DNA of 64,000 nucleotides from Octopus sinensis (Eukaryota). Below the pieces are notes generated by a model that did not search any database, had not been told where the DNA came from, and worked only from the letters and a program-made list of their open reading frames with translations. The stretch covers positions 29,636,001 through 29,700,000 of the forward strand of contig NC_043001.1 of assembly GCF_006345805.1 (NCBI RefSeq), read 5' to 3'. Positions 1,007 through 63,617 of the stretch are shown here, one piece after another. The number at the start of each line of letters is the position of its first letter. Position 1 is the first letter of the stretch. A program made the translations under genes and the position numbers.

Positions 1007-1195
1007 ATGTTTATCAGCATCACTGGCTGTGAGCTGTATTATACTTGTACCAGGAGGACTGTTAACATCAATAGTTTTAGTATATATGTTACTTGAGAAT
1101 ATAGGTCCATTCAAATTTCTTGTCACCGTGATGGTTACATTGGCAGAAGCAGTTTGCCGAGAGATAGCAAACTGTTTGCTTGCTGTTACTGTCAT
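1007..1195 (-). CDS. Cadherin exon E24 (A type, 63 aa) [63 protein letters not shown]
   Basis: TTTGCAG acceptor, GTAAGT donor, 189 nt. Confidence 0.93.

Positions 1196-63617: not shown

What the first reader, a model, noticed from the sequence alone, without database searches (positions are those of the whole stretch)
1007..63617. Giant cadherin built from strictly alternating phase-0 half-domain exons
Seen: 23 of 23 introns are phase 0, with A exons (177-195 nt) and B exons (117-153 nt) alternating. A exons straddle the inter-domain linker, so exon boundaries fall inside EC domains. Any exon skip stays in frame, and skipping any A+B or B+A pair removes one repeat length while making a chimeric domain. 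Established: coleoid protocadherins have about 6-7 ECs, largely in large exons, so this is not one of them. Inference: the gene grew by tandem duplication of a two-exon unit and could generate length or chimeric isoform diversity by modular skipping.
Basis: partly seen in the sequence, partly recalled or inferred. Interest (0 to 1): 0.75.

Follow-up and report, generated by a model that had tools for sequence, protein, structure and literature searches.

The report
Giant octopus cadherin, half-domain exons
The window holds 24 real, expressed exons from the middle of an enormous octopus cell-adhesion (cadherin) gene in which every repeat is split over two in-frame exons; this is a tidy product of tandem duplication, and I found no sign that exon skipping is used to make variant proteins.

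Summary
On the minus strand, 24 exons (3,999 coding nt) lie between 1007 and 63617. All 23 introns are GT..AG and phase 0. Linker-straddling A exons (177-195 nt) alternate with mid-domain B exons (117-153 nt). The exception is exon 48113-48427, a fused A+B exon of 315 nt, so the alternation is not strict.

Transcript contigs from four studies join exons 6706/9236/10735/11169/12666 exactly as predicted. One of these contigs is 21 kb long.

The window is a small part of the gene. The same pattern runs for about 84 exons over about 200 kb, and the gene spans at least 380 kb.

All-phase-0 amounts to two ancestral introns copied many times, not 23 independent events.

No skipping junction was seen, so isoform diversity remains speculation.

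Relatives in gastropods, a bivalve and a nemertean are named "protocadherin Fat 4-like", but the four scanned have no EGF or laminin-G domains.

Earlier notes of this scan already describe this gene on adjacent DNA.

Verdict: real and well-formed, of modest interest; a new member of a known kind.

The parts
63429..63617 (-). A exon (189 nt), first exon of the window part
   Evidence: AG/GTAAGT, phase 0. 83% identical to P0002 residues 710-772.
59305..59430 (-). B exon (126 nt)
   Evidence: AG/GTAAGG, phase 0. Pfam Cadherin profile 28-64. Absent from model P0002.
57378..57566 (-). A exon (189 nt)
   Evidence: AG/GTAAGG, phase 0. 79% identical to P0002 residues 773-835.
53534..53686 (-). B exon (153 nt; an alternative acceptor at 53668 gives 135 nt)
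   Evidence: Two phase-0 AG acceptors, donor GTAAGT. The choice is unresolved.
48113..48427 (-). Fused A+B exon (315 nt): the A|B intron is missing here
   Evidence: Uninterrupted frame. Pfam Cadherin E=6.5e-9, 36.5 bits against a cut-off of 28.8. 80% identical over 105 residues without a gap to P0002 residues 836-940.
45929..46117 (-). A exon (189 nt)
   Evidence: AG/GTAAGT, phase 0. Pfam profile 70-92 at its start.
44405..44530 (-). B exon (126 nt)
   Evidence: AG/GTAAGT, phase 0.
42058..42243 (-). A exon (186 nt)
   Evidence: AG/GTAAGT, phase 0. Pfam profile 1-24 at its end.
37527..37667 (-). B exon (141 nt)
   Evidence: AG/GTAAGG, phase 0.
36642..36827 (-). A exon (186 nt)
   Evidence: AG/GTAAAG, phase 0.
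33682..33813 (-). B exon (132 nt); the only one in the window with an intact DRE motif
   Evidence: AG/GTAAGT, phase 0. Pfam profile 29-67.
30975..31163 (-). A exon (189 nt; an alternative donor 6 nt further gives 195 nt)
   Evidence: Donors GTAGCG or GTATGG, both phase 0. The choice is unresolved.
25361..25483 (-). B exon (123 nt)
   Evidence: AG/GTATGT, phase 0.
22859..23050 (-). A exon (192 nt)
   Evidence: AG/GTAAGT, phase 0. Weak pyrimidine tract.
20139..20267 (-). B exon (129 nt)
   Evidence: AG/GTATGT, phase 0.
18130..18315 (-). A exon (186 nt)
   Evidence: AG/GTAAAA, phase 0.
15373..15489 (-). B exon (117 nt, the shortest)
   Evidence: AG/GTATTT, phase 0.
12666..12848 (-). A exon (183 nt)
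   Evidence: The donor side is confirmed by RNA joint 11306>12666 in 3 runs.
11169..11306 (-). B exon (138 nt)
   Evidence: Both ends are confirmed by RNA joints in 3-4 runs.
10735..10917 (-). A exon (183 nt)
   Evidence: Both ends are confirmed by RNA joints in 4 runs.
9236..9370 (-). B exon (135 nt)
   Evidence: The acceptor is confirmed by joint 9370>10735. The donor joint has the predicted length, but the aligner places it 2 nt over because of one differing letter at 9237.
6706..6882 (-). A exon (177 nt)
   Evidence: Covered end to end by transcript contigs in 4 runs. In run X1 it lies in a 21,057-nt contig.
3608..3733 (-). B exon (126 nt)
   Evidence: AG/GTAAGT, phase 0. 83% identical to P0002 residues 1215-1256.
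1007..1195 (-). A exon (189 nt), last exon of the window part
   Evidence: AG/GTAAGT, phase 0. 81% identical to P0002 residues 1257-1319.

Best explanation
The window is an internal stretch (about 12.7 cadherin repeats, 1,333 codons) of one very large, transcribed cadherin gene of an octopus. The gene lies on the minus strand, spans at least 380 kb and gives an mRNA of at least 21 kb.

Each extracellular cadherin (EC) repeat is encoded by three pieces: the last third of an A exon (strands A-B, up to the DxD motif), a B exon (strands C-E), and the first third of the next A exon (strands F-G plus the linker).

The array grew by unequal recombination inside introns. Each new copy inherited the same two intron positions, which both happened to be phase 0. 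Alternating similarity shows that the latest amplification unit was two repeats (four exons). One A|B intron was later lost precisely, which gave the 315-nt fused exon.

The exons are spliced consecutively, that is constitutively, in the RNA that I could examine.

Shown: the exon map, the phases, four junctions, expression, the period-2 similarity and the extent of the gene. Inferred: the duplication mechanism, the intron loss and constitutive use of the other 19 introns.
For: - Exon map, GT..AG ends and lengths divisible by 3.
- Pfam Cadherin coordinates of the exon halves.
- The same A/B phase-0 pattern was picked without forcing the phase in the flanks, from window +103,222 to -99,525. That is about 84 exons. 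The one apparent gap was filled by a 129-nt B exon with AG/GTAAGT ends.
- A-type exons lie on the same strand of the same contig from C5:29,405,033 to 29,736,124. N-terminal exons reach window +151,046.
- RNA contigs of four runs (four studies) join consecutive exons at the predicted sites. One contig is 21,057 nt long, with 18,274 nt on the 3' side of exon 6706.
- Even-lag similarity exceeds odd-lag similarity for A exons (68.7 against 53.9 at lags 2 and 1) and for B exons (38.9 against 21.2). No shuffle out of 5,000 and 3,000 reached the observed value.
- The exons are 73-90% identical to two consecutive UniParc models, P0002 and P0007, presumably from a related octopus (my inference).
- Literature: cadherin exon junctions are under-represented in linkers, and two-domain duplication units are the commonest in repeat proteins (PMC1553488).
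Against: - Only 4 of the 23 window introns were checked against RNA, and only with assembled contigs, which hide minor isoforms.
- One of those four joints needs a one-letter difference between the RNA and the assembly to be canonical.
- Whether the two intron positions are older than the array could not be tested. The DNA of relatives was out of reach (look-up of encoding contigs closed).
- A exons show no one-to-one collinear match with gastropod, bivalve or nemertean relatives, so the age of the array is unknown.
- The 3' end of the octopus gene was not read.
Confidence: 0.8

Rival explanations
1. One reading: the all-phase-0 modular layout is used by the cell. Single exons or A+B pairs are skipped to give proteins of different length or with chimeric domains.
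For: - Every exon length is divisible by 3, so any skip is in frame.
- The related models P0002 and P0007 lack B 59305, B 53534, twelve consecutive exons (B 44405 to A 12666) and other B exons, all in frame.
Against: - RNA contigs of four runs join only consecutive exons across the four introns examined. No non-consecutive joint is among the listed joints.
- Half of the window's 24 donor sites (12) are the consensus GTAAGT, as expected of constitutive exons (general knowledge).
- Omitting a single B exon, as in P0002, would leave a repeat without strands C-E. This looks like a gene-prediction miss of short, divergent exons. The B exon at -65,339 was missed in that way.
- The period-2 pattern persists over about 40 repeats. 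This suggests that single-repeat losses have not been tolerated in evolution (inference).
Confidence: 0.1
2. The array length varies at the DNA level between octopus species or individuals, through unequal crossing-over in register with the repeat. On this reading the 12-exon (six-repeat) omission in P0002 is a real deletion, not a model error.
For: - P0002 passes from the counterpart of A 45929 straight to that of B 11169. That is a register-preserving loss of six repeats, or three double units.
- A near-identical partial second copy of an A exon and a B exon lies beside an assembly gap at window -22,828 to -21,830.
Against: - P0002 and P0007 are separate fragments of one gene and also miss single exons, which points to a poor model or a fragmented assembly.
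- The six repeats missing from P0002 are at most about 49% identical to any other repeat, so they are old and should be present in a sister species.
- The duplicate at -22 kb touches a run of 100 N and may be an assembly artefact.
Confidence: 0.12
3. The exons are a decaying or mis-assembled repeat array: a pseudogene or an artefact, not a working gene.
For: There is one 100-N gap with duplicated exon pieces in the downstream flank.
Against: - There are no in-frame stops in about 84 consecutive exons.
- All checked introns have canonical splice sites.
- Spliced transcript contigs occur in four studies, one with depth 331.
- Protein identity to the related models is 73-90%.
Confidence: 0.02

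Closest known systems
Lophotrochozoan giant cadherins auto-named 'protocadherin Fat 4(-like)' or 'Fat 1-like': Haliotis rubra XP_046564129.1 and XP_046561621.1; Patella vulgata XP_050391949.2, XP_055954920.1 and XP_055954929.1; Tubulanus polymorphus XP_074647699.1; Potamilus streckersoni KAK3608192.1
   Same: - They are the best matches in the library, with 17-32 matched repeats each (names).
- They have the same degenerate linker, xRNxxxPxF, in place of DxNDNxP.
- They contain only Cadherin domains.
- The N-terminus of the bivalve protein is collinear with the upstream exons of the octopus gene.
   Different: - They are shorter (2,190-4,071 residues), or are fragments.
- Individual repeats do not pair one-to-one with the octopus repeats.
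Fat / Fat-like cadherins (FAT1-4, Drosophila Fat and Kugelei)
   Same: They have dozens of EC repeats on a single-pass membrane protein. This is the name that automatic annotation gives to the relatives.
   Different: - Fat proteins carry EGF-like and laminin-G domains between the last EC and the membrane, and most of the ectodomain lies in very large exons (general knowledge).
- The four relatives with a membrane-spanning segment show no EGF or laminin-G domain.
- The octopus gene is cut into exons of 117-315 nt.
CDH23 / PCDH15-type long cadherins
   Same: These are long cadherin-only ectodomains split over many small exons whose borders fall inside repeats, and some of their linkers are calcium-poor (general knowledge; not tested here).
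   Different: - They have about 27 and 11 repeats, against roughly 75-85 here.
- As far as I know, no regular two-exons-per-repeat, all-phase-0 layout is recorded for them.
Repeat genes built of symmetric in-frame exons: fibrillar collagen 54-bp exons, and the nebulin block of four exons for seven domains
   Same: - All exons of the array are in the same phase.
- In nebulin the exon borders lie inside the repeats.
- Growth was by duplication of multi-exon blocks (PMC1553488; the collagen case is general knowledge).
   Different: - The protein fold is different.
- In nebulin and collagen some of these exons are known cassette exons. Here no skipping has been seen.
Another giant cadherin of the same genome, built from a four-exon / three-EC module
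   Same: It comes from the same genome and the same idea applies: a cadherin array built from a repeated multi-exon cassette.
   Different: It is a different gene on another piece of the genome, with a different module (4 exons for 3 ECs). That note reports it as secreted. I did not test it.

Membership tests
Cadherin superfamily (Pfam PF00028) | Sequence matches the EC-repeat profile above the curated cut-off | tested here: met
   - Fused exon: 36.5 bits against a cut-off of 28.8, E=6.5e-9.
- Single exons match the expected parts of the profile.
- Related model P0007: 576.6 bits over 16 stretches.
Cadherin superfamily (Pfam PF00028) | Canonical calcium-binding linker DxNDNxP between repeats | tested here: not met
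   - None of the 13 linkers in the window is canonical: 9 have RN, and the other four have KN, GN, KD or RD.
- Canonical linkers do occur in the N-terminal exons upstream of window +100 kb.
- Calcium-poor linkers are known in accepted cadherins, so this does not exclude membership.
Fat / Fat-like subfamily | EGF-like and laminin-G domains between the last EC and the membrane-spanning segment | tested here: inconclusive
   - These domains are absent from relatives P0036, P0027, P0006 and P0022, each of which has a membrane-spanning segment 100-130 residues from its end.
- The 3' end of the octopus gene itself could not be fetched.
Protocadherins (clustered and delta types) | 6-7 EC repeats, with the ectodomain in one large exon | tested here: not met
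   - The 264 kb examined hold at least 42 repeats, in exons of 114-315 nt.
- The protocadherin-type matches elsewhere in this genome sit in open frames of about 800 codons.
Dachsous | 27 ECs and a conserved cytoplasmic domain | not testable with these tools
   The cytoplasmic part of the octopus gene was not reached. The repeat count already exceeds 27.
CDH23-type | About 27 ECs and a membrane-adjacent domain | not tested
The repeat count exceeds 27.
Symmetric-exon repeat arrays (collagen- or nebulin-like gene layout) | All array exons are multiples of 3 and are bounded by introns of one phase | tested here: met
   - All 24 window exons meet this.
- So do about 84 exons in the extended region. 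For two of them the phase-0 acceptor is an alternative choice.
Cassette-exon (modular skipping) genes | Transcripts that join non-consecutive exons | tested here: inconclusive
   None is listed across the four introns in four runs. However, these are contigs, which drop rare forms, and 110 further joints were not shown.

The most novel reading that the evidence does not exclude
The in-frame, half-domain exon layout is exploited. The length of a very long cadherin filament with calcium-poor joints is tuned in steps of two repeats. This could happen by regulated skipping of four-exon blocks in particular tissues, or by copy-number change between individuals and species. The six-repeat gap in the related species' model would then be a first glimpse of this.
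Probability: 0.1. Interest if true: 0.6.

Novelty: new member of a known kind. Interest (0 to 1): 0.3.

Why it matters
- It is a clean example of how a repeat protein of roughly 75-85 domains can be built. Two introns inside the domain, both in phase 0, are copied together with a two-domain unit.
- It has a practical consequence. Because every exon is in frame, gene predictors can drop exons without any penalty. The public models of the related octopus miss at least 17 of the exons mapped here, and automatic names such as 'Fat 4-like' mislead.
- The gene family is large, has calcium-poor linkers, is widespread in molluscs and occurs in a nemertean. My five literature searches found no description of it.
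- The specific point of this finding, the exon layout, adds detail rather than a new principle.

Tried and rejected
- Plus-strand reading: there are no cadherin motifs on the plus strand. The gene is on the minus strand.
- Mapping P0007 onto the genome to chart the downstream exons: the tool failed twice.
- Word search with the fused exon, to find short transcript-derived fragments that might show alternative junctions: no candidates. With a query of 105 residues this says nothing about longer proteins.
- One-to-one matching of octopus repeats with relatives' repeats: best and second-best scores were nearly equal, so there was no collinearity signal.
- Literature searches for a description of this gene or of phase-0 half-domain cadherin exons: nothing specific was found.

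Full report
**What is in the window**

Motif scans and six-frame translation show no cadherin signal on the plus strand. On the minus strand there is a regular series of short open segments.

All 23 introns begin with GT and end with AG and are 251-5,491 nt long. Every exon length is divisible by three, so all introns are phase 0. The coding total is 3,999 nt, or 1,333 codons.

There are two exon classes:
- A exons (177-195 nt) start like 'xxVxAxDxGxPP', run through the inter-domain linker and end at a DxD motif.
- B exons (117-153 nt) carry the middle of a repeat.

Pfam places the start of each A exon on Cadherin profile positions 70-92, its end on positions 1-24, and B exons on positions 28-67. 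The fused exon passes the curated cut-off (36.5 bits against 28.8).

**The one exception**

Exon 48113-48427 is a single uninterrupted 315-nt exon that contains an A part followed directly by a B part. It aligns without a gap, at 80% identity, to residues 836-940 of a related protein model. The alternation is therefore not strict.

The simplest reading is precise loss of one A|B intron.

Two exon ends have equally plausible in-frame alternatives: 53534 (135 or 153 nt) and 30975 (189 or 195 nt).

**RNA evidence**

Seventeen runs guessed to be RNA hold 11-18% of the sampled words of window 6700-12699, which is about the exon share of that stretch.

I laid contigs of four runs, from four studies and two organism labels, on this stretch:
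- Joints 9370>10735, 10917>11169 and 11306>12666 lie exactly at the predicted sites, with CT..AC ends on the plus strand.
- One joint skips 2,353 nt, the predicted length of intron 6883-9235. The aligner draws it 2 nt over (6884>9238).
- The sequences show that this shift is equivalent to the canonical junction plus one differing letter at 9237. That would change Leu to Gln.
- In run X1 all these exons lie in one contig of 21,057 nt at depth 331, with 18,274 nt on the 3' side of exon 6706.
- No joint between non-consecutive exons is among those listed.

Limits of this evidence: these are assembled contigs, which drop rare forms. Another 110 joints, mostly in repeats, were not shown.

**The gene is much larger than the window**

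The window is G000:C5:29,636,001-29,700,000 in a genome of 2.72 Gb. I fetched 100 kb on each side and built profiles from the window's A and B exons.

- The same alternation, with phase-0 AG and GT sites chosen without forcing the phase, runs from window +103,222 to -99,525. That is about 84 exons.
- An apparent A-A junction near -64 kb turned out to hide a divergent 129-nt B exon with AG and GTAAGT ends. The fused exon is thus the only exception in about 200 kb.
- Upstream of +100 kb the exons are cut differently and carry canonical DxNDNxP linkers. They are collinear with residues 89-980 of a bivalve relative and reach +151,046.
- A profile search of the whole genome finds A-type exons on the same strand down to C5:29,405,033.

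The gene therefore spans at least 380 kb. The 21-kb transcript contig implies roughly 75-85 repeats in all.

**How the layout arose**

The 23 phase-0 introns are not 23 independent events. They belong to two classes (A|B and B|A), each copied with the repeat. The chance that two ancestral introns are both phase 0 is about one in four or five, given usual phase frequencies (general knowledge). The regularity reflects common descent by tandem duplication, with break-points inside introns.

Global alignment scores between exons show higher similarity at even lags than at odd lags:
- A exons: 68.7, 62.7 and 63.1 at lags 2, 4 and 6, against 53.9, 56.1 and 51.4 at lags 1, 3 and 5.
- B exons: 38.9 at lag 2 against 21.2 at lag 1.
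- None of 5,000 (A) or 3,000 (B) order shuffles reached the observed contrast.

A single-repeat unit may still have come first.

It also fits the general survey of repeat proteins (PMC1553488), which reports three things:
- Two-domain duplication units are the commonest.
- Cadherin exon junctions are under-represented in linkers.
- Nebulin has a repeated four-exon block whose borders all lie inside domains.

**Relatives and family**

A full scan of 1.84 billion representative proteins with the fused exon gave 4,395 hits.

Two UniParc entries, P0002 (1,915 aa) and P0007 (2,803 aa), are 73-90% identical to consecutive parts of this gene. They are presumably models from another octopus. The tool gives no organism, so this is my inference.

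These models omit, always in frame:
- B 59305, B 53534 and B 74071;
- the pair B 95819 and A 91935;
- the B exon at -65,339;
- twelve consecutive exons from B 44405 to A 12666.

Single-B omissions would leave a repeat without its core. I read them as prediction misses, made possible by the very fact that every exon is in frame. The twelve-exon gap could be an assembly gap or a real deletion, and I could not tell which.

The other close relatives share the degenerate linker xRNxxxPxF. They are named 'protocadherin Fat 4(-like)' or 'Fat 1-like' in Haliotis, Patella and the nemertean Tubulanus, and 'hypothetical protein' / 'Cadherin domain-containing protein' in the bivalve Potamilus. Four of them have one membrane-spanning segment 100-130 residues from the end and only Cadherin domains, with no EGF or laminin-G. 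The Fat name is therefore not supported by the architecture of these relatives. For the octopus gene itself this remains untested.

**Does skipping make isoforms?**

The arithmetic is correct, but nothing I could examine shows skipping being used:
- Only consecutive junctions appear in the RNA contigs.
- Half of the window's donor sites are the consensus GTAAGT.
- The period-2 order has been kept across about 40 repeats. This suggests that losing a single repeat is not well tolerated (inference).

A DNA-level copy-number variant of it gets about the same.

The tools that were closed or failed are listed under Tried and rejected.

**Verdict**

This is a real, expressed, very large cadherin gene with a neat layout of two exons per repeat, all in phase 0, and one fused exon. 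The duplication unit needs correcting, and the isoform idea has no support so far.

The gene has already been described on adjacent DNA by this scan (s1-105739, s1-106444). What this finding adds is the exon-level account.

Noticed in passing
window 28311-29651 (+): A 446-codon open frame in intron 12, opposite to the gene, matches reverse transcriptase (PF00078, E=1.4e-27). It is a retrotransposon remnant inside the intron.
   Followed up: partly
window 7300-7699 and 10100-10699: The RNA contigs pile up to summed depths of 10^5 here, with many variant letters and repeat-type joints. These are highly repeated, transcribed interspersed elements in introns 20 and 21. They are not part of the gene's exons.
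   Followed up: no
L016, about 7170-8170 (window -22,828 to -21,830): Near-identical partial second copies of the neighbouring A exon (-21,774) and B exon (-21,052) lie beside a run of 100 N. This is either an assembly duplication at a gap or a very recent tandem copy of a two-exon unit.
   Followed up: partly
window, all 13 linkers in the A exons: The calcium-binding motifs are degenerate. None of the 13 linkers is DxNDNxP (9 have RN). Only one of 12 B parts keeps DRE (33682-33813). DxD is kept in 11 of 13, and the strand-A glutamate in 7 of 13. Canonical linkers return in the N-terminal exons upstream of +100 kb.
   Followed up: partly
window 9237: Transcript contigs from three studies read a different letter from the assembly at the last codon of exon B 9236 (CAG in place of CTG in mRNA sense). 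This makes the aligner shift the junction by 2 nt. It is probably a polymorphism or an assembly error.
   Followed up: partly
P0002 and P0007 (UniParc UPI0006956867 and UPI0006955DBA): The public models of the related octopus split this one gene into at least two proteins and drop at least 17 exons in frame. The annotation of this gene family is unreliable because all exons are in phase.
   Followed up: partly
literature, PMC11431876: Proteins named 'protocadherin Fat 4' are reported in Octopus vulgaris skin mucus and fall in abundance at senescence. Whether any of them is this gene is unknown, so this is a lead for where the protein acts.
   Followed up: no
G000:C5:29,418,038, 29,482,013 and 29,529,654 (outside the fetched region): A-type matches here lie in open frames of 212, 181 and 155 codons, longer than a normal A exon. 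More fused exons may exist in the downstream part of the gene.
   Followed up: no
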